Shown here piece by piece: positions 22,000-33,981 of a stretch of 64,000 nucleotides of DNA. How positions within the stretch are numbered: position 1 is the stretch's first letter; every line of letters begins with the position of its first letter. The stretch comes from Takakia lepidozioides (taxonomy: Eukaryota; Plantae; Bryophyta), in NCBI GenBank assembly GCA_030704615.1, contig CM060731.1, positions 65,782,001-65,846,000 of the forward strand, in the 5' to 3' direction. The notes beneath the pieces are model-generated. The model was not told the origin of the DNA. It saw only the letters and a program-made list of their open reading frames with translations, and did not search any database. Made by a program: the position numbers and the translations under genes.

Positions 22000-23700
22000 G
22001 GTTAGTCGAGGTAATGTCATTTTCTTGTGAAAGAGGTTTGTCAAGTATCTCACATTGTTAGGACTCAGGTAAATATACTAAGAGCCATAGTTCACAGCTG
22101 AAAGATGCATATTGTTTGTAGGGTTGGATATGCTAGCGGTTTTGTTCACCTTCCTTATCCAGTAATTCCCATCTTTAACGATGACAAGTTACATGTAGGG
22201 CTGGATAGAAAGGATTGTTTGAATCTGAAAACCTCATCTCCTTCTGTCCATCTCAAAAGGTTGGGATTCTCCCATGCATTTATCTAAGGAGGTTTAAGGA
22301 AACCCCAAGAGGGTTGGAGGGTTTATGCCATATGATCCCCTTTTGTGGGTTCATGAGGACAGGTCATGAGGTAGGCAATCACACAATGAGGGATGTGGCT
22401 AGCTGGAGCCTTTCGCCGGTATGCGCTTCGAAATTTTTGAGCCTAATAAAATTGTAGATGTGCTCAATAGGCCCTAAGATGGTTTTAGTTCAGTGGAGAA
22501 TCCAACTCACTAGGCCAAATGAACATTTCAAAATACTTTGGACCTTCTGTGTGCTGTGTCAGGAGGAATTTGAGGAGCAACTTATAGCAGTGGACAATCG
22601 TATCAATAGCTTCGTCCAGTACGATACAAGTGACAACTCCATAAAGTGGTTTTGCCCTGTAAGTACTAAGTTGTGTAATTCTCAGGATTTGGGTTGTCTG
22701 AATTTTAAGTCAAGAATCTAGCATCTTGTTCAGTGAAGTGATCAAAGCTTGCTCAATAGCCACATTGACAGACTTTACAGTGTGAGTTGGGATCTAATAG
22801 CATCTGTATCTCTCTCCCCTCTGCCCTTTTGTGACTTGCAGTACAACCACATGCACATTTGCAACATGTGTCTCAAGCTAGAGTGTTGCAGTGCCCTGGC
22901 ACGGCTGACAAGGAAAGGGGATCAAGTGTGCATGTGCTGGCATTGGCATAATGCTGGAGGTTGTCGTATGTAGCCTGCTAGGTTGAGGCCCCAGAAATTT
23001 TCTAGGGAGAGTTGGTGTCTTGCGGCAACCATGCCCTTAATAGTTAACTTTACTGCTGGTGTGGCAGGGCCATGGTTTCTACAATAGGAAAATCGTGAAA
23101 ATTTGCAAGGCACATGGCTATAGGATAGCCTTGGGGTCTTTGTTTCCTCTGGACCACATGTTTAAGGACCAAGCCAGGCTCCTCGTCAACAACATGCTAT
23201 GGCGGGTGAGTTCTCTGCTCTATCTTCTTCTCGAATGTAAAGCCATTCGTGTGTAAATTTTCCCTCCATGCTACATTTGATAACTCCAAGGAAATATTTG
23301 GGGCTGAATGTGTAACTCAGGATTTTTGAGTTGCCTGGGGTGGAATTATGCCCTGACACATTGGGTGCTTCAACTGAGCTTATACAAGTCACTAAGTACT
23401 GCGAGCTAGATGCTGTTATTTTGGATGACTAATGTGGATCGTGATATCTTTAAGAACTTGACTAGTTTGTTGACAGGAAGCTTAATGTCTTTTCGGAATT
23501 ACTTTAGGCAATGGGCTTGAGTAGTTCAACACTCTGAGGTTTATCCTGGCATGCCAACCAGTTTGTGTCCCAGCCACAATGGTTCAATCTGGAGATGGGG
23601 GACGTGGCTAAGATGACATGTCCGTGACTTACCAAACAAAAAACAGTTGTAATGATGGAGTGGGTGCATGTTTGGTATGAAGATGCATCCAGGTACAGTC
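22000..23700 (-). mobile_element. Probable highly degenerate non-LTR retrotransposon remnant
   Basis: There is no intact ORF. Reverse-strand SPKYFLGVI resembles the YLG motif at the end of LINE RT domains. Boundaries are approximate. Confidence 0.25.
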
Positions 23701-25251
23701 ATCATACTGCATGATCGATTACCATTCTAGTACATGTGAGGAGATACTTTTGTATGTCACGAATAATAGTGTAGCCGTGAGAATTTCACCGTGAAAGACT
23801 ACACAGAAACAGAAGGCCTGCTGATTCCTTATTGCCAATTTGTAAAGATGCTAGTACACTGGCGTAATGTATGTTTAGGTGAAATTTTCATTATCTCCTC
23901 CTGTCAAGGATTGCTGAAGACAACAAGTGAGAAATGCAGGTTTTGAGGATGCTGTTACCAGAATTGAGAAGACAAGGATACATGGTGGTTACGCTCTGCG
24001 AGCTTATGCATTTACAACATGACTCTCATTTGCATAGTAATGTGTAAGGTTTGTTGAATAACACAGTAGCCTCCAACTCCACATAGAGCATGCAAGTCCC
24101 AAGTGAGGTCAGTATTCAAACCAGTGGGTTGACCCCTGCTGGGTGATAGAACAAAGGACCTGTCGTCATGAGGATGAGTGATCTAAACATCTGAAGATCA
24201 ATTCAATCTATACCAGTAAGTTAAAAATTGGGATACACAGTGACGTTCCGCAAATGTTTGGGCCTTCTAAACAGATGTGCCCTAGCCATGGTTGTGTGAG
24301 GGTTAGTTCTTTGTTGCTTTCAGTGTCCATGCTGGAAGCCAATGCAGTGACTGGTTGGTTTAACGAATTAGCTGATGACGAATCTCACAGCACCACAGGA
24401 TTTGCAGCCCTTCATGATAGTAGTGGACATCCCCCTCTTCCTAATGAACTGACTCATTGTTCTATTAATCAACTCATTCCAATATGAAGGTTCAAAATTA
24501 CTGTGTATGTACATACTGATTTGAAAGTTGGTAACTGAGCCATCCACCAGAAAATTGCTCTCCCGCCAAGGCAGCTTTTTCTCTGCCTCCTGCTATCACA
24601 AATGCACAACTTAATTGCAGGTTGTGGTTGGAACTTGCTGACTTTCTGGATATTAGAGCTTTGACACAACATGTGGAACCCAGTCCAACTCTCAGGAGGA
24701 GACCCCAAGCGTCAAGACAATTAGGGTCAACTGCAGAGGTATATGGATTCTAGTAAACCCTGGTTAATCAACCACTTGTATAAATGTGCAATGGGAGATG
24801 CATTCCCTATTTCACACATGAATCAGTGCAATTGCTCACTTTTACAGGTGCGTGAGTAGCGTCGTCCCGTCCGTCATTGCTGCTGCTGTCGCCCTATGTG
24901 GAATGTGTGTCATCTTTCGCCAGATTATTCAGTTCGAGGTCAAAAATATCTTCCTGCCGTAGGTGCAAAAAGCAGCAATGGAGATTGTACCTTCAGTGTT
25001 GTTCGCCACCCTATCTGTTGTATGTGCTACCTGGACAAACTCTTAAACCCAAAACACTGGGCTCCTTCCATGCTCTCCATCTGAAGCCAAAGTAGATAGC
25101 AACTTGCCAAATTTCAAGTATGCCTCTTCTTATTTTTTGTTGTATTCCCGGAGCTCTTCAGATGGCTCTTACTCAAAGCAAGACTGGAACAGAGAGATGT
25201 TGTGCCTCTTTCACTTGAATCTGGGTCTGATATGTATATGAGAAATTTGAT

Positions 25252-26910
25252 CTATGCCACCCCCGAGTGTTGCAAGTCACGGACTCTGTTTTCCCCTACC
25301 TTGGTTGTCGGGGTCAAACTCTCTACACGCTCATAAGATTGTCGACTCGTTGGTGGCTTCTTGAGAGCATGTAATGAGACTAGGATAGAGTGAGAAAGCC
25401 ACGCATCTGCAGCAGCATACTGAATCTGCCTGAACGTCAAGCCCCGTATCTCCCAGTTACTCATCGTGGACCTCCTGTCCTTCTTGTAAGTGACCCCGAG
25501 CACTCTTTTCGTTAGAGTGGATATGCCTGCCTTTCTAAGAGACTGATCTCCCAATATGGAAGCCGCAAGTGGCCCTAGTTCGACCTCCCCCGCACACTCA
25601 AGACCGTGATCTTCCTTCAGCTTCTTTGTGTCCTCCTGCACATCGGCTAAAATTCAAACCTATCCAGATTCTTCCTTCACAATATTCAAAAACGGGTATC
25701 GCAATTCGTTGTCTGAACTGTCACAAAGCAGTCCTGACCATGCAGCATTGATGTTGGACTGACAAAGATCAAAGGATGAACCGCTTTCAGGACCCTCCGA
25801 CTTTTCGCGATTAAACACTGCATTTGGTGATTATGCACCGTAACAGAGTGACACAAAGATAAAAAAAAGTACAAAGATATGACGAAGTATCATCATTCTG
25901 TATAGGTGTGATATGTTTCAACATACCTTAATGCCAACTCCACCCAACATCACATTTGGGTCTGCGAGGAACCGTCTAAGGGATGAAGGAAACACATCAA
26001 TGTGTAGAAGCTGAACCAAAAGGCACCGTGTCTCGAGAGAGAGCTGCAAAATGGCAGCAACATGGTAGTCACCTTTCTGGAATGTGGGGCGCCATTCGAT
26101 GTCCAACCCCAATTTAGTCTCCTCTCTGTATTCATCCAACCAGCTCTCAACCGTTGCAGCCGAGGCGGCCACTGTCACCAGCACTTTCTTTCCCAGTATC
26201 TCCACCACGCTATCGCAGCAATCAAAGCCACTTCCCGTCGAAGGGCCGTACGCATTATACCTCGGATACGCCCAGTCGGATTGTTCTTCTTTAGCAATTG
26301 GTTCGTCCCAGCCGGATTGTTCCTGTGTAGCAATCGGTTCGTCCCAGCCACTCCAATTCCTTCCCCCACCCTCTGTCTCCTTCCAATTTGCAAAATTAGA
26401 TTCCGTTTCCTGCGGGACCGGGATACGTTCCGTCTCTATGCACGTCTCTCCCCAAGCCCCAGTTCCTCTTTGCTGGTGCATCTGTCCTTCTATGCCCACT
26501 GGCATACGCTCCGTCTCTATGCACGTCTCTCCCCAAGCTCCAGTCCATCTTTGCTGGTGCATCTGTCCTTCTATGCCGGACGATGGCTGGCTTCGTCCTA
26601 AACCCTCGCTGCCTTGTCCCCAACCCCATATCTCAGAGATATTGTTCTGTTGGACTGGTTCCATTGAGGTCCCTCTTTGCTGGTGCATCTGTCCTTCTAT
26701 GCCCGACGATGGCTGGCTTCGTCCTACCCCCTCGCTGCCTTGTCCCCAAACCCATACCTCAGAGATATTGTTCTGTTGGACTGGTTCCATTGAGGTCCCT
26801 GCAGACTTCATCTCTCGCCTCCTCCAGTTCCTCCGACTTCCCTCCTGCCTCTTTGTTTTCCCTCTTTCTTCCAATGCAGCCTCCATAGCGCTCCCTGGAT
26901 TTGGGAGCAT
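25252..26910 (-). CDS. DEDDy 3'-5' exonuclease (WRN/WEX-like DnaQ fold) with a repeat-built WG/GW-rich N-terminal extension, ~455 aa
   Basis: Exon 1 is 26910-25927 (AAG|GTATGT) and exon 2 is 25635-25252 (GTGCAG|GAG), phase 0. ExoI LGLDIEWRP, ExoII GVGIK|EDTKKL, SNWE and ExoIII QIQYAAADAW are all intact. The N-terminal ~230 aa are low-complexity repeats. Confidence 0.92.
26270..26800 (-). repeat. Nested coding tandem repeats within the exonuclease N-terminus (126-bp, 81-bp and 36-bp units)
   Basis: 42-aa unit GTSMEPVQQNNISExWxWGQGSEGxGRSQPSSGIEGQMHQQR x2; 27-aa unit xTGAWGETCIETERxPVGIEGQMHQQR x~1.6; 12-aa unit SGWDEPIAxxEQ x~2.3. Confidence 0.9.
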
Positions 26911-26962
26911 CTTCCTCTCTCCCTCCCAACCTGCTTAATCAACCACCTGCCCTCTCTATCAA

Positions 26963-27262
26963 CTCTAAATCACTCACCTGCGCTCTATCGATCTCCTCCT
27001 TCTGCACTCTAAATCACTCACCTTCCCTCCATCGATCTCCTCCTTCTGCACTCTAAATCACTCACCTTCCCTCCATCGATCTCCTCCTTCTGCACTCTAA
27101 ATCACTCACCTTCCCTCCATCGATCTCCTCCTACTGCACTCTAAATCACTCACCTTCCCTCCATCGATCTCCTCCTTCTGCACTCTAAATCACTCACCTG
27201 CCCTCTATCAATCTCCTCCTTCTGCACTCTAAATGACCCCCCTGCCCTCTATCAATCTCCCA
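26963..27262. repeat. 44-bp tandem array, 6 full copies plus 1 partial, immediately upstream of the exonuclease ATG
   Basis: The unit ctctaaatcactcaccttccctccatcgatctcctccttctgca starts at 26963, 27007, 27051, 27095, 27139, 27183 and 27227. Confidence 0.95.
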
Positions 27263-27321
27263 CTCTATCACTGCCATTCTCCAGCGAGAAACTTCTCCTT
27301 AAACCATATGAGTGTTTGTAC

Positions 27322-28247
27322 CAGTGTTGGACTGGTATGTCGAAAAGAAACTGGTATGTATACTGGTATGAAGTACCAGACCAAGTCTGGTATCACCTCA
27401 GGCCGCTACCTAGCATATACCTATATTGGCCTGGTATCTGCTTCCTAATACTGTGGACAATACCCTAGTCTGGTAGGTGGTTGAAAATCTGGTACCTGAT
27501 ACCAGTACCATATCCATATTTGTGAGGAAAACCTAGGTATCAATAGAGTTATCGGTACAGTGAGCCTCAGTTTGGTACCATGTTTGGACCCGAGTTACGG
27601 GTTTCCTCCTAAGTTTGAGTAAATCCGTAAAGTGCAGAAAATTGGGCACGAAGTCAGAAAAGAGGGCACCAAATCATAAACTGGGGATGAGGGCAACCGC
27701 TGCTATAGCGCGAGCTCGTGAGCTCTGACCGCCTCCGCCTCGACGACTAACAAAACTCGGCACCAAACTCCTTTCACCCCCATTTTCCTAAGTCCTGGCA
27801 GTTTGGTCCCGTGTTTTTTTCTAATCGTACCGCTTGATCCTGAGTTTCGAGTTTCATACCGAGTTTTGGCCAAACTCAGGGTTCTCATGCCGAGTTTGGG
27901 ACCCTTTACGGATAACTCTAATACTTTGAGGAACTTGAGGATTGAGGAATAAAATCAATGAGAAGCATGCTTGTACACATTTATATGAGAAGTGGGCCTT
28001 TCAATATTTGACATATCATGAGTTTTCTCGATACCAGACCAGGATTGATAACACCCAGGTATCGATTTATATTCTTGCTATTGATACCCGTAAAACACCA
28101 CACCAATCAGGTATTATTCATACCACCATGGTATCCAAATCTTAGATTTTTGCCAATACCAATACCTCCCTGGTATCACAATTGGCCGGAGGCCTATATG
28201 CCAGTACCAGCCTGGTGTGTTCAAAATACAATACCAATCCAACACTG
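27322..28247. mobile_element. Non-autonomous hAT-type DNA transposon (MITE)
   Basis: TIRs CAGTGTTGGACTGGTAT / ATACCAATCCAACACTG with 1 mismatch. 8-bp TSD gtttgtac (27314-27321) / gtttggac (28248-28255). Numerous subterminal GGTAT/ATACC repeats and no transposase. Confidence 0.85.
27544..27920. mobile_element. Small TIR element nested within the hAT MITE
   Basis: TIRs TAGAGTTATCGGTACA / TTTACGGATAACTCTA (14/16 match) with internal (C)CGAGTTT-like repeats. No clear TSD. Confidence 0.55.
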
Positions 28248-28416
28248 GTTTGGACCTTGCCATGGCACAATTAGGGTGATCCCAGGTTCACTCCTGGGAG
28301 GGATTGATTAATTGATGTACATATGAGAGGAAGTATCGAAGAGAAATTGGTTTACACTAGACATAGGATGGGAGTTGATTGCGCGCTTGCAAAGCTTGCC
28401 TATAGGATGCCTGGAG

Positions 28417-28760
28417 CTAACCGGAGGGCCCCTTGGGCCCGTGGTCAAATCCCCACCCCCCATCCCCTCGTGTATGCTTCACACCCATCCGAGGGTCCCA
28501 CGCTCCATGTTCCCAGTGCGGCGCTCCCCTGTTATTGGAGCGACGAAGCAGTAAAACTGGGGAGCAATAGCACAAAGGAGCCGGGAGTAGTAACAGGGGA
28601 GCGGTAACAGGGAGTGGCGGAGCAATAACAGAGGGGAGTTGTAACACACGGGAGCAGCGGACACACGGGAGCAAGGAGAACAGGGAGCGGCGGACACACT
28701 GGGGAGCGGTATGTATGTGGGAACATGGGAGCAACAATTGGGAACAGGGGAGCGGAGATC
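28417..28760. repeat. GC-rich low-complexity repeat (GGGAGC motif array), probably a TE subterminal region
   Basis: About 10 imperfect (a)cagggagc/cacgggagc units at 28560-28755, preceded by the hairpin gggccc-ctt-gggccc at ~28426-28440. Confidence 0.55.
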
Positions 28761-30724
28761 AGCTTGAGGGACTTAGAAAATTTTTGGAGATGCGAAAATC
28801 TAATGGTACCTTAGTCAAATCGTTAAACATATGATTTCCATCGCGCCATGGGCGAGGTTTGAACGTTTGAACCCAACACCCCCACAATAATGGTCAATGC
28901 ATCTAGCCACCAAGGTACCCGCCAAGGGTATTATAGTATATTTTGTATTATAATACAGGCAACTAGGGTTTCGCATTGCTTCGCACTACTAGCGACGAAT
29001 TCTGAGAACTACGCATCATGTTAAAATAAACGAAGAAAATGTGGTCAAAGGACCTTAAACCGTGTCAAACCTCCGATTTGTTGTGGTGTGCTGAATCATG
29101 CTCCCTAGTTTTCTTTGAAAATGAAGTGTTGTTGCTATTGGTTGTTCCCACAGTGTCCGGTCTTTCAGACCTTCTGAAACTGACCAAATGAGTTGGGGTA
29201 CATAGTTTTTCCCTTCTTCTTACGTTTTGCCAAAGCAAGAGAGCCCATTGCAATTTGAGGCTTGTTTCATTTGATATTAATTTGACACGTGTAATGACTC
29301 TTGATACAACAAGTAGATTTTGTTTATAAATGTTGTTTATATGATATCTATTTCCTCTTTATTTTCACTTGGTTTAGATTTCAAATTGTTTGGATGTTGA
29401 TCTAATGTCATGGTTTCACGAACAAACTTGGTTATTTTATTTAATGTTTTTTTTTTTTTTTTTTTTTTTTTTGGCGTTCATCATATATTTGTCTTTATTT
29501 AAAGCATATTTTATCTGCCTCTCCGTATTAACATTTTGGTTTTCCATATTATTTGAAGTTATACACATGCCCAAGTTCTCAAAACTCAGGGTGCAGTTTC
29601 TGAACCTCCTACTGGTTCGCTAGTGTGTTGGTATGAATACAGTTCAGCCGAAAAAGTTGGATATTATGAAGCCAATGCAAAATTATCTCCTATGATGGGG
29701 TCAGTATTGCAGAGATCTATGACTTTGAAGGCTCGGAAACCACGTGCCGGTGCTTAGGAATCCTACAGCGGGGCTCTACAATATCAGCCAGACTGCAGGG
29801 ATACAATTTCTTCAGAAGCTGCAGGGATTTTGGGATCAACGAGGGCATTGGGTCTCAGATCTGCTACCTCGCTTGAAGAATTGTCTTCTCTCTTTCGACT
29901 GACCTTGATTACATTGGGACCAGGGAAAAATTGTTAGATAACCAGAGCTCAGCTCTGATGAAGTGTAAGTTCAGTGAAGAGGCTGAAAAAGATGTGGGTA
30001 AAGAGAGGACAATGTCAAGCCATGGGGATGGAAGGGCATCCAGAAGCCTTTTAGAAGACAAAAATAGAGGGACTAGGCTGGCTTCAAGACCAATACATTC
30101 GTAGAATCGTAACTCCACAATCCACAACCCACAAAACTGAACCCACAACCTGCACCAGCAAGACCAGGTCCTCCACCAATCCCCAATACTCATTTGCTTC
30201 CTTCTGTATGATATCAGTCCCGGACATTTGCAAGTCATTGACTTCTTTGGTCAATGTTGTTTGGTCATGGTTAGTCCTAGCAACATGAGCAGCAAACACC
30301 ACCAGGAAACTCAAAATTATGTTGTTTTCTCTCGGAGTTCCACTACAGCTGATTTGAGCTCTGCCTAAGAAGCAGCTATCATACGTTCCTTCCACACCTT
30401 CTCGGCAAGGCGGACGATCAGAAGGAAAGCTACGAGCGTGAGGGATTTCACAAGAAACATGATGCTTTGGGTCCACTAGACCTCCCTTAGCGGGTTGTAT
30501 CCAGTGTCAACTTCTCTGTCTGAATTCATCCGTGCAAACAACGCTTCCGCCCCTGTCATAACAGCAGGCAATTGAAATAACTCATTGACGAACCTTCAAG
30601 TGTGAGATCACATGCAAATCTAGCCAAATATGTGAATGTACATCAAAATTGTGTCATTAACTCTTGTGTAAGCTAAACCCACATTACTACCAATGTGTCA
30701 ATACTGATGCTTCAAGCCGTTCTT

Positions 30725-33133: not shown

Positions 33134-33981
33134 GTTTGGCGAGACTAAAGTTTGTTCCTTAGTTAGTTAAGATGAAAGACACATTTGCGAAAATGGTCGC
33201 CACATTGCAAAGTCTTCAGCTCCAGATGCAAGAACTTCATACCTCTACCGCCCAATTGCAAGGTGATCAGTTTCAAGATCTTGGCAACGCTCTCCACAAT
33301 TCGCAACAACAAATTTCAGAGTTAAAGGAGTCGAATAATGGATCTTCCATACAAGTCCCTACTGCAACAGCTCCTACTGCAACTGTTCATCTTCAACAGA
33401 TTACGAGAGAACCAAAGATCAACATGCCCGAGAAATTTGATGGAACGAGATCAAGATTTCGCGGTTTTGTTCAACAAGTACAACTGTTCCTACTACAACA
33501 TCCACAACGCTACCCCGATGAAGGGATTCAAGTCAGATTCGTGGGCACCCTTCTATCAGGCACTGCCCTATCTTGGTTTGCACCGCTAATAGAAAAAAAA
33601 TTCGCATTTACTATATAATTTAGAAGCATTCATGTCCGAGTTCACTGCAACGTTTGGAGAGAATGATAGAGAGAGAGTTGCAGAGGCAAAAATACGAAAT
33701 CTTTGACAAAGAGCACGTCATGCTTCCGTTTATGCTGCCGAATTTCGACAACTTGCGTGCGACCTCGACTGGAATGAGAAGAGCCTAAGTCAGTTTTAAT
33801 GTGGGCTAAAAGATGATGTAAAATATTTGTTGCTGACAATGCCAAACGTGAGTACACTGAACAAATTCATCCCCAAGTCATTGCATGCGACAATCGTTTG
33901 TTCGAAAGATGTCAAGAGAAGCGATCTGGATGGTCAACAACGCACCATGCCGCTGCTACTACGGCAACGACGCTACCGCGT

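What the first reader, a model, noticed from the sequence alone, without database searches (positions are those of the whole stretch)
25252..26910. DEDDy exonuclease fused to a WG/GW-rich tail: candidate Argonaute-hooked small-RNA trimmer
Seen: an intact WRN/WEX-type exonuclease (D-x-E, D, Y-x3-D all present) preceded by ~230 aa of Gly/Ser/Glu/Gln-rich repeats. These hold 13 Trp, 7 of them in WG/GW dipeptides (VWG, IWGWG, AWG x2, SGW x2), and the repeats were visibly amplified by recent tandem duplication. Known: WG/GW platforms in disordered regions are Argonaute hooks (NRPE1 CTD, SPT5L/KTF1, SDE3, NERD, animal GW182). DnaQ-fold exonucleases act in silencing (Arabidopsis WEX and RICE1/2, Drosophila Nibbler, C. 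elegans MUT-7). Inference: one protein could dock on AGO and trim small-RNA 3' ends or clear slicer products. I do not recall this domain combination being described in plants.
Basis: partly seen in the sequence, partly recalled or inferred. Interest (0 to 1): 0.85.

Follow-up and report, generated by a model that had tools for sequence, protein, structure and literature searches.

The report
Tryptophan-tailed WRN-type exonuclease of bryophytes
This is a real, expressed moss gene: a Werner-type 3'-5' exonuclease with a disordered, tryptophan-rich N-terminal tail whose core Gly-Trp-acidic motif is kept across mosses and liverworts, which fits an undescribed Argonaute-docking nuclease, although no binding has been tested.

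Summary
A two-exon gene on the minus strand (exon 1 25927-26910, intron 25636-25926, exon 2 25255-25635) encodes 328 + 127 aa. It has a 232-aa tail with 13 Trp, 7 of them in WG/GW, then a complete DEDDy exonuclease whose nearest solved relatives are WRN-exo and EXD2.

Spliced RNA contigs from two studies use the predicted intron, cover the repeats and pass the ATG. Orthologues also keep Trp.

With Trp masked before alignment, one motif, [SG]-G-W-[DE]-[DEQ], still lines up in ten of the eleven moss, liverwort and allied tails, 31-45 aa before the domain. The eleventh has GWWDE at -46/-47. A second Trp lies 12-24 aa further on in eight of them.

AlphaFold predicts the tail to be disordered and the domain to be confident. 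The Trp-tailed proteins form one well-supported bryophyte clade. Other streptophyte lineages have similar tails.

An Argonaute hook is the best single reading (about 0.4). It meets the published sequence criteria, but binding is untested. Docking to another hub and a condensate role remain open. I found no prior description. The scan flagged other GW tails in this genome, but not this gene.

The parts
26962..27199 (-). 44-bp tandem repeat (5.4 copies) upstream of the start codon, probably part of the 5' leader. Several units carry a 4-codon mini-uORF (M-E-G-R-stop) and a splice-donor-like AGGTGAGT.
   Evidence: TRF; sequence and translation; X1 contig depth over 27007-27340. The period is not a multiple of 3, unlike the repeats inside the coding region.
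26908..26910 (-). Start codon ATG. It is the first in-frame ATG after a TAA 27 nt upstream.
   Evidence: One low-depth X2 contig reads ATA here (C>T at 26908), so in that sample translation may begin at Met9. That would remove only 8 residues.
26215..26910 (-). Coding sequence of the 232-aa N-terminal tail. It is rich in Gly, Glu, Gln and Ser, has net charge -13 and 13 Trp, and is predicted disordered.
   Evidence: Composition. AlphaFold2 pLDDT is 36-56 with no secondary structure over residues 1-228. No Pfam domain in the tail.
26543..26800 (-). In-frame tandem duplication of 126 bp (42 aa) x2 at 95% identity. Each unit carries a W-x-W-G motif.
   Evidence: TRF; translation. RNA contigs cover 26510-26661, 26675-26787 and 26771-26881.
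26423..26577 (-). In-frame tandem duplication of 81 bp (27 aa) x1.9 at 94% identity. Each unit carries an A-W-G-E motif.
   Evidence: TRF; X1 contig record 1 reaches 26452.
26271..26349 (-). In-frame 36-bp (12 aa) repeat x2.2 that carries the S-G-W-D-E-P motif twice (W189, W201), followed by S-D-W-A-Y-P (W213). The three Trp are spaced 12 and 12 residues apart.
   Evidence: TRF; Trp positions and spacings. Covered by the spliced X1 contig 25926-26452.
26299..26316 (-). Conserved anchor motif S-G-W-D-E-P (W201, 34 aa before the domain). It is the counterpart of [SG]-G-W-[DE]-[DEQ] in the moss and liverwort orthologues.
   Evidence: The column aligns in ten of the eleven tails compared, even with Trp masked to X before MAFFT; the eleventh, P0019, is misaligned by 3 columns but has GWWDE at -46/-47. 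Positions -31 to -45 in the ten.
25927..26214 (-). First half of the DEDDy exonuclease domain (exon 1 residues 233-328), including the Exo I motif D270-I-E272 (26095-26103).
   Evidence: Pfam PF01612 profile positions 7-79; alignment to WRN-exo 2e6l/2fbt; AlphaFold2 pLDDT 93-97.
25636..25926 (-). Phase-0 intron of 291 nt (GT..AG), at a position conserved in moss relatives.
   Evidence: Spliced contigs in two runs from two studies join 25634|25926, give or take one base. The relatives P0001, P0002 and P0006 read through at the same point, and L002 has the same two-exon layout.
25255..25635 (-). Exon 2: second half of the exonuclease domain (Exo II E1-D2; Exo III Y73-x3-D77 at 25405-25419) plus a C-terminal extension of about 35 aa. 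The stop codon is at 25252-25254.
   Evidence: Pfam PF01612 profile positions 86-166, 37.4 bits, above the gathering score; alignment to EXD2 6k17.
24866..25251 (-). 3' UTR, at least 386 nt. Overlapping X2 contigs extend coverage to 24438.
   Evidence: Contig pieces X1 record 1 and X2 records 8-10.

Best explanation
The locus is an expressed two-exon gene. It encodes a catalytically complete WRN/EXD2-type DEDDy 3'-5' exonuclease behind a roughly 230-aa intrinsically disordered, acidic tail studded with Trp.

Shown: the gene model, the splice, transcription of the tail, the intact active-site motifs, the predicted disorder, and conservation of a proximal two-Trp module across mosses and liverworts. 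That module is [SG]-G-W-[DE]-[DEQ] about 31-47 aa before the domain (31-45 in the ten tails that align), with a second Trp 12-24 aa further on.

Inferred: these Trp act as short linear motifs that dock the nuclease on a partner. The most likely single partner is an Argonaute, with the Trp inserting into the tryptophan pockets of the PIWI domain and the acidic flanks meeting the basic surface around them. That would put a 3'-5' exonuclease next to the 3' end of the bound small RNA, or next to the 3' end of a sliced target. It would then trim or clear RNA in the manner proposed for Atrimmer, Nibbler or RICE-type enzymes.

The in-frame repeat amplification in this species would raise hook valency. 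The distal basic, Trp-containing patch (residues about 17-35) may be a nuclear signal or a nucleic-acid contact.
For: - Gene model and expression: contigs of two runs from two studies splice exactly at the predicted GT..AG intron, cover exon 1 up to 26981 and show no other joint.
- Enzyme: PF01612 is contiguous across the splice. D-x-E, D and Y-x3-D are present. The model of a Sphagnum orthologue superposes on WRN-exo at TM 0.81; Nibbler and RICE1 are also matched.
- Disorder: pLDDT is below about 56 with no secondary structure over the tail, both in the window's exon-1 product and in the orthologue P0007.
- Trp conservation: the anchor motif aligns in ten of eleven tails with Trp masked, and P0019 has GWWDE at -46/-47. 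In moss type B, 70% of Trp are conserved against 30% of other residues. Among Sphagnum species, tail Trp are invariant at 6/6 and 10/10 positions, against 82% and 92% of tail sites.
- Trp context: over 88 Trp in 12 tails, Gly at -1 is enriched 3.9-fold and Asp at +1 3.5-fold.
- Trp content: clade tails have a median of 3.3% Trp, against 0.78% in 60 other relatives.
- Phylogeny: the Trp-tailed proteins form one clade with 99% SH-aLRT support.
- Published criteria: an AGO1-pocket ligand is expected to have conserved Trp in a disordered region plus a conserved negative patch (bioRxiv 10.1101/2025.10.18.683247). TNRC6 sites hold at least two Trp 10 or more residues apart (PMC9262622). Here the spacings are 12 and 12.
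[quoted passage not shown] The DEDDy enzyme ATRM2 interacts with AGO1 (PMC8957957).
Against: - No binding data of any kind. No complex model could be made with these tools.
- The GW-hook predictors (Wsearch/Agos) were not available.
- Only one to two Trp are positionally conserved. In moss type A the other Trp are no better conserved than average (16% vs 18%).
- The domain is closest to WRN-exo and EXD2, which act on DNA or on both nucleic acids, and is further from Nibbler. An RNA substrate is therefore an assumption.
- Acidic Trp motifs in disordered tails are also used by DNA-repair hubs, by CCR4-NOT and as condensate stickers.
- Several Trp sit in non-hook-like contexts (R-N-W-R-R, E-V-W-V).
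- The Arabidopsis WG/GW screen lists no nuclease (PMC2910046).
- The contigs break inside the repeats, so no single RNA molecule has yet been seen spanning the whole tail.
Confidence: 0.4

Rival explanations
1. DNA-repair docking tail. The enzyme is a WRN-exo-like DNA end-processing nuclease. The acidic Trp motifs recruit it to a genome-maintenance hub that reads acidic-aromatic peptides, such as RPA70N, the TFIIH p62 PH domain or Ku.
For: The best sequence and fold matches are WRN-exo and EXD2. The conserved motif is Trp followed by Asp/Glu in a net-acidic tail. That acidic-aromatic peptides bind RPA70N and p62-PH, and that human WRN has acidic repeats next to its exonuclease, is my own recollection and was not checked here.
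Against: Gly precedes Trp in 41% of cases. That is the hook signature and is not a feature I know of for RPA or p62 ligands. No other repair domain is present. No partner was tested.
Confidence: 0.2
2. Sticker-and-spacer tail, or a non-AGO RNA-decay partner. The Trp act as aromatic stickers in a Gly/Ser/Gln/Glu-rich disordered region and partition the nuclease into condensates (siRNA bodies, P-bodies, nuclear bodies). Alternatively they bind the Trp pockets of CCR4-NOT (CNOT9/NOT1), as the GW182 silencing domain does.
For: The tail has a disordered, low-complexity composition. Trp number and position turn over while Trp density is kept. In-frame repeat amplification changes valency. The SGS3 preprint itself notes that aromatic residues in disordered regions also drive condensation.
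Against: A positionally fixed [SG]-G-W-[DE] motif at a fixed distance from the domain, kept across mosses and liverworts, points to a specific ligand site and not to generic stickers. The tail has few Tyr or Phe (3 Y and 2 F in 232 aa).
Confidence: 0.15
3. The tail has no specific function. It is a fast-evolving low-complexity N-terminal extension. Its Trp richness reflects repeat amplification and compositional drift, and only the exonuclease domain matters.
For: Tail sequence diverges quickly: 12-18% pairwise identity in the broad and type A comparisons. The amplification is recent and species-specific. Close paralogues such as Riccia P0015 work without a tail.
Against: The anchor motif is retained in every member of the clade, and Trp are invariant among Sphagnum species. 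Trp density is four-fold that of other relatives' tails. Every duplication is in frame. Trp-rich tails recur in Mesostigma, Diphasiastrum, Amborella and Proteaceae.
Confidence: 0.07

Closest known systems
WRN exonuclease domain (human/mouse; PDB 2fbt, 2e6l) and human EXD2 (PDB 6k17)
   Same: Same DEDDy/DnaQ fold and the same Exo I-III residues. They are the best sequence hits (E 4.6e-17 with the Ceratodon orthologue) and the best fold hit (TM 0.81, 29-30% identity).
   Different: WRN carries the domain at the N-terminus of a RecQ helicase, and EXD2 has a membrane anchor. Here the domain stands alone behind a disordered Trp-rich tail. Substrate preference is unknown.
Arabidopsis WEX (Werner syndrome-like exonuclease, required for PTGS) and the plant proteins NCBI names 'Werner Syndrome-like exonuclease'
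   Same: Stand-alone plant PF01612 exonucleases. Angiosperm relatives in the same HMM neighbourhood carry this name. That WEX mutants lose post-transcriptional silencing is from my own knowledge (Glazov et al. 2003) and was not checked here.
   Different: Orthology to WEX was not established. No Arabidopsis sequence was recovered among the 150 best representatives or the 120 listed Protea-like hits. Most angiosperm members are about 200-215 aa and have no tail.
GW/WG Argonaute-hook proteins (NRPE1 CTD, SPT5L/KTF1, SDE3, the SGS3 disordered region, animal GW182/TNRC6)
   Same: Trp in a disordered Gly/Ser/acidic context. Multiple Trp are 10 or more residues apart. There is repeat amplification and turnover, with only the Trp conserved, and a negative patch.
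   Different: None of the known hook proteins carries a 3'-5' exonuclease, and none was listed in the Arabidopsis screen. Here one motif is positionally fixed. AGO binding is untested.
AGO-associated 3'-5' exonucleases: Arabidopsis Atrimmer1/2 and RICE1/2, Drosophila Nibbler, C. elegans MUT-7
   Same: DnaQ-fold nucleases that act on AGO-bound small RNAs or on RISC cleavage products. The Nibbler EXO and RICE1 structures are matched by the orthologue model (TM 0.68-0.71). RICE1 is also a weak sequence hit of exon 2 (E 0.0037).
   Different: This domain is closer to WRN/EXD2 than to Nibbler. As far as I know, none of those enzymes has a GW tail. How they meet AGO is a different or unknown matter.

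Membership tests
DEDDy 3'-5' exonuclease, Pfam PF01612 (WRN-exo/EXD2/RNase D type) | Significant match to the PF01612 profile over the whole domain | tested here: met
   Exon 2 scores 37.4 bits (cut-off 23.6) over profile positions 86-166. Exon 1 scores 18.1 bits over positions 7-79, below the cut-off on its own but contiguous with exon 2. Full-length orthologues carry precomputed PF01612.
DEDDy 3'-5' exonuclease, Pfam PF01612 (WRN-exo/EXD2/RNase D type) | Exo I D-x-E, Exo II D and Exo III Y-x3-D catalytic residues | tested here: met
   D270-I-E272 aligns with the WRN D-M-E motif. E1-D2 and Y73-A-A-A-D77 of exon 2 align with the E-D and Y-A-A-R-D of EXD2. These columns are invariant or nearly invariant in 71 relatives.
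DEDDy 3'-5' exonuclease, Pfam PF01612 (WRN-exo/EXD2/RNase D type) | DnaQ/RNase H-like fold | tested here: met
The domain of the orthologue P0007 has pLDDT 91-98 and matches WRN-exo at TM 0.81. The exon-1 half of the window's domain has pLDDT 93-97.
DEDDy 3'-5' exonuclease, Pfam PF01612 (WRN-exo/EXD2/RNase D type) | 3'-5' exonuclease activity, and its substrate (DNA or RNA) | not testable with these tools
   Needs an enzyme assay.
GW/WG Argonaute-hook proteins | Trp residues located in an intrinsically disordered region | tested here: met
   All 13 Trp lie in residues 29-213, where pLDDT is 36-56 and no secondary structure is predicted. The orthologue behaves the same way.
GW/WG Argonaute-hook proteins | Several Trp flanked by Gly/Ser/acidic residues and spaced 10 or more residues apart | tested here: met
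   7 of 13 Trp are in WG/GW. W189, W201 and W213 are spaced 12 and 12 apart. Across 12 tails, Gly at -1 is enriched 3.9-fold and Asp at +1 3.5-fold. The spacing criterion comes from PMC9262622.
GW/WG Argonaute-hook proteins | Trp and a negative patch conserved among orthologues while the rest of the tail diverges | tested here: met
   The anchor [SG]-G-W-[DE]-[DEQ] aligns in ten of eleven tails with Trp masked, and the eleventh has GWWDE. Net charge is -5 to -18 in nine of the eleven bryophyte-clade tails; P0023 is +6 and Riccia +1. The criterion comes from bioRxiv 10.1101/2025.10.18.683247. The distal Trp of moss type A are not positionally conserved.
GW/WG Argonaute-hook proteins | Score above threshold in a dedicated predictor (Wsearch/Agos) | not tested
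GW/WG Argonaute-hook proteins | Trp-dependent binding to the PIWI tryptophan pockets of an Argonaute | not testable with these tools
   Needs pull-down, co-IP or a complex model. Only monomer prediction was available.
Arabidopsis WEX orthologue group | Falls in one clade with AtWEX in a domain tree | tested here: inconclusive
   No tool returned AtWEX, so it could not be placed. The tree shows a bryophyte-only clade with Mesostigma nearby.
Nibbler/MUT-7/EXD3-type small-RNA trimmers | Closest structural and sequence relatives are Nibbler or Mut-7, and accessory Mut7-type domains are present | tested here: not met
   WRN-exo and EXD2 rank above Nibbler (TM 0.81 vs 0.68). Pfam finds no domain other than PF01612. 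This argues against membership of that group, not against a trimmer-like function.

The most novel reading that the evidence does not exclude
Bryophytes, and perhaps the streptophyte ancestor given the Mesostigma protein, possess a dedicated Argonaute-docked 3'-5' exonuclease. In it a GW/W-acidic hook and a WRN-type DEDDy nuclease are fused in one polypeptide. This would physically couple RISC to 3'-end trimming of guides or to clearance of sliced targets. It would be a cofactor class not described in any plant, and a candidate for an old, conserved ligand of the AGO tryptophan pockets.
Probability: 0.3. Interest if true: 0.85.

Novelty: new variant of a known kind. Interest (0 to 1): 0.62.

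Why it matters
Plant small-RNA trimming and clearance of cleavage fragments are attributed to nucleases (Atrimmers, SDNs, RICE1/2) whose route to Argonaute is poorly understood. A recent preprint on the AGO1 tryptophan pockets notes that further pocket ligands probably remain to be found.

A nuclease that carries its own conserved hook would give a direct, testable physical link. It occurs in genetically tractable models: a Marchantia orthologue and mosses. W-to-A alleles, knock-outs and small-RNA 3'-end sequencing are all routine there.

Even if the partner turns out not to be Argonaute, the result is a clean example of a short linear motif held at a fixed distance from a catalytic domain across mosses and liverworts, inside an otherwise freely evolving, repeat-expanding tail.

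Tried and rejected
- Each exon was handled by reference, and full-length natural orthologues (P0007, P0008) stood in for it.
- Word-indexed protein search restricted to the domain: returned only mosses and added nothing.
- Search with the Protea relative: gave many angiosperm 'Werner Syndrome-like exonuclease' entries but no Arabidopsis protein. WEX orthology stays open. A motif grep for WEX-like strings from memory did not identify it either.
- ESM Atlas feature search of the tail: no usable hit.
- Rfam over 23000-30000: nothing.
- Bacterial-type promoter/terminator scan: irrelevant for a eukaryotic gene and discarded.
- Karlowski 2010 WG/GW candidate list: contains no nuclease. Literature searches for a GW-tailed exonuclease found none.
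- ATG8-interacting (W-x-x-[LIV]), clathrin/AP (DPW, WxxF) and ALIX (YPxnL) motif readings of the conserved Trp: considered by eye and rejected, because the required flanking positions are not conserved across the orthologues listed.
- The 284-aa ORF on the opposite strand (26084-26938 +): rejected as a by-product of repeat composition. The intron orientation (CT..AC on the plus strand) shows that the minus strand is the mRNA strand.
- Organism names of the nearest Logan relatives: not given, so the window's species was not identified beyond 'a moss'.
Full report
**Gene model**

The finding lies on the minus strand. Two ORFs, 25918-26910 (330 aa) and 25252-25641, are separated by an interval that begins GTATGT and ends TGCAG. 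Cutting there gives:
- exon 1 = 25927-26910 (328 codons, ending G-V-G-I-K);
- a 291-nt phase-0 intron (25636-25926);
- exon 2 = 25255-25635 (127 codons), with the stop at 25252-25254.

Pfam PF01612 (3'-5' exonuclease) matches profile positions 7-79 at the end of exon 1 and 86-166 at the start of exon 2, so the splice rebuilds one domain. Every search used one exon by reference, and natural full-length orthologues stood in for the whole protein.

**Expression**

Contigs of two public runs from two different studies were laid on 23500-28500. Both contain a joint that skips 25635-25926, give or take one base, with CT..AC on the plus strand. That is GT..AG on the minus strand.
- This shows that the runs are RNA, that the minus strand is the mRNA strand and that the predicted intron is used.
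- One X1 contig runs from 24866 through the splice to 26452.
- Further pieces cover 26510-26661, 26675-26787, 26771-26881 and, in X2, 26771-26981. That last piece reaches 71 nt beyond the ATG.
- No other joint was reported, so nothing indicates that the repeats are spliced out.
- The contigs break inside the tandem repeats, as short-read assemblies do, so a single molecule spanning the whole tail has not yet been seen.
- A TAA lies in frame 27 nt upstream of ATG 26910.
- One low-depth X2 contig reads ATA at the start codon (C>T at 26908). If real, translation would begin at Met9, costing 8 residues.

**The enzyme**

- Exon 1 aligns to human and mouse WRN exonuclease across the D-x-E motif.
- Exon 2 aligns to EXD2 across the E-D of Exo II and the Y-A-A-x-D of Exo III.
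- With the Ceratodon orthologue, EXD2 and WRN-exo tie as best solved relatives (E 4.6e-17).
- An AlphaFold2 model of the Sphagnum orthologue P0007 has pLDDT 91-98 over the domain. It superposes on WRN-exo at TM 0.81 (29-30% identity), ahead of the Nibbler EXO domain (0.68) and RICE1/At5g06450 (0.71).

The domain is thus a complete DEDDy exonuclease of the WRN/EXD2 kind. Sequence cannot tell whether it prefers DNA or RNA.

**The tail**

- Residues 1-232 contain 33 Gly, 29 Glu, 22 Gln, 21 Ser and 13 Trp (5.6%).
- Shuffling the tail gives a mean of 3.4 Gly-adjacent Trp (p = 0.03).
- Tandem Repeats Finder reports duplications of 126, 81 and 36 bp at 95, 94 and 88% identity. All are multiples of three, unlike the 44-bp array just upstream of the ATG, as expected for coding sequence.
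- The duplications inflate the Trp count. About eight Trp are independent, by my reading of the repeat units.
- Pfam finds no domain in the tail.
- AlphaFold2 on the exon-1 product with a 27-row alignment gives pLDDT 36-56 and no secondary structure up to residue 228. The domain then starts at pLDDT 93-97. The orthologue gives the same picture.

**Relatives**

A word-indexed search found only bryophyte proteins: two Sphagnum paralogue groups, Ceratodon, unnamed moss transcripts and a short Riccia protein.

A profile search of 1.84 billion representatives gave 5231 hits. A maximum-likelihood tree of 126 domains places mosses, three liverworts (Marchantia paleacea, Riccia fluitans, Calypogeia fissa) and one unnamed sequence in one clade with 99% SH-aLRT support.
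- Every clade member with a complete N-terminus has a Trp-rich tail. The median is 3.3% Trp, against 0.78% in the tails of 60 other relatives. This comparison is descriptive, because the rows are related.
- Near the clade sit two Mesostigma proteins, one with 9 Trp in a 117-aa tail of charge -23, and tail-less Riccia paralogues.
- Trp-repeat tails also occur in other clades: Diphasiastrum (A-W-P-N units x6), Amborella (P-W-F-D units x5), Protea and Tasmannia. Most angiosperm members are about 200-215 aa with no tail.
- The architecture is therefore fixed in mosses and liverworts and recurrent elsewhere in streptophytes.

**Is Trp conserved?**

Aligners reward Trp-Trp matches, so I replaced every Trp by X before running MAFFT on eleven tails.
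- One column still lined up in ten of the eleven, all the mosses and liverworts: [SG]-G-W-[DE]-[DEQ]. It lies 31-45 residues before the domain. In the window it is S-G-W-D-E-P at W201, with a duplicated copy at W189.
- The eleventh, the unnamed sequence P0019, is misaligned by 3 columns but has G-W-W-D-E at -46/-47.
- A second Trp lies 15-22 residues before the domain in eight of the eleven, 12-24 residues after the anchor.
- In moss type B, 70% of Trp are conserved pairwise against 30% of other residues. In type A, which includes the window, the more distal Trp are no better conserved than average (16% vs 18%).
- Among Sphagnum species all tail Trp are invariant (6/6 and 10/10), against 82% and 92% of tail sites.
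- Over 88 Trp in 12 tails, Gly precedes Trp in 41% (3.9-fold enrichment) and Asp follows in 22% (3.5-fold).
- Net charge is negative in nine of the eleven bryophyte-clade tails (-13 in the window).

The amplified repeats are a species-specific elaboration.

**Mechanism**

The data show a catalytic domain preceded, at a fixed distance, by a conserved Trp-acidic short linear motif in a disordered tail, with further Trp whose number varies. That is the anatomy of a docking tail.

Argonaute is the best single candidate partner.
- A recent preprint sets out what an AGO1-pocket ligand should look like: conserved Trp in a disordered region plus a conserved negative patch that meets the basic surface around the pockets (bioRxiv 10.1101/2025.10.18.683247).
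- TNRC6 sites hold at least two Trp 10 or more residues apart (PMC9262622). The tail meets each of these criteria.
- Plant 3'-5' exonucleases are already placed at AGO. Atrimmer1/2 trim AGO4-bound precursors (PMC6232588), and the DEDDy enzyme ATRM2 interacts with AGO1 (PMC8957957).
- I put this reading at about 0.4.

It stays an inference. Nothing here shows binding. The domain's nearest relatives act on DNA or on both nucleic acids. Acidic-aromatic peptides also serve repair hubs such as RPA70N and TFIIH p62 (my recollection, about 0.2). They also serve CCR4-NOT pockets or condensate formation (about 0.15). A functionless tail is unlikely (about 0.07), given the fixed motif.

**Novelty**

The Arabidopsis genome-wide WG/GW screen lists no nuclease (PMC2910046). 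Full-text searches for a GW-tailed exonuclease found none. The database entries for the relatives are 'hypothetical protein', '3'-5' exonuclease domain-containing' or the automatic 'Werner Syndrome-like exonuclease'.

I therefore rate it a new variant of known kinds: a known enzyme family carrying a known type of tail, in a combination not described. Orthology to Arabidopsis WEX could not be settled, because no tool returned that protein.

The scan's earlier notes mention two other GW-tail candidates elsewhere in this genome, neither checked, and nothing on this gene.

**Dead ends**

The Atlas feature search, Rfam and the bacterial promoter scan gave nothing useful. The organism could not be named. 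The closest relatives are unnamed moss assemblies at about 55% identity over exon 1.

Noticed in passing
window 26962-27199 (minus strand): A 44-bp tandem repeat (5.4 copies, 97% identity) sits just upstream of the ATG and is covered by X1 contigs. Several units contain a 4-codon uORF (M-E-G-R-stop) and a consensus-like splice donor AGGTGAGT. It may regulate translation, or it may hold a leader intron.
   Followed up: partly
window 26908: One X2 contig (depth 4) has C>T on the plus strand. This turns the annotated ATG into ATA on the coding strand. It could be strain variation or an assembly error. The next in-frame Met is residue 9.
   Followed up: partly
window 27584-27924: This stretch is covered at 4-7 times the depth of the exonuclease gene in X1, and more in X2. 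The contigs differ from the window at 3-5 positions per 100 and diverge into several different continuations at 27922-27924. It looks like a transcribed multi-copy repeat or a shared exon. There is no Rfam match.
   Followed up: partly
window 33172-33618 (plus strand): A 148-aa ORF whose sequence looks like a retrotransposon Gag fragment. This is judged by eye only and no domain search was run.
   Followed up: no
window 26084-26938 (plus strand): A 284-aa ORF is open on the strand opposite the tail-coding repeats. The intron orientation shows it is antisense to the mRNA, so it is most likely a by-product of repeat composition.
   Followed up: yes
proteins P0007 vs P0012 (Sphagnum); P0016-P0018 vs P0015, P0041, P0037 (liverworts): Mosses carry two Trp-tailed paralogue types, A and B, both present in Sphagnum. 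Liverworts carry one Trp-tailed gene plus at least two paralogue types with Trp-poor N-termini (tails of 37-123 aa). This is a natural contrast for testing what the Trp-rich tail adds.
   Followed up: partly
tails of the window protein (residues about 17-35) and of the moss orthologues: There is a second recurring element: a basic patch with an embedded Trp ([RK]-x-W-[RK]-[EQR]-[RK]), far upstream of the acidic GW module. It may be a nuclear signal or a nucleic-acid contact.
   Followed up: no
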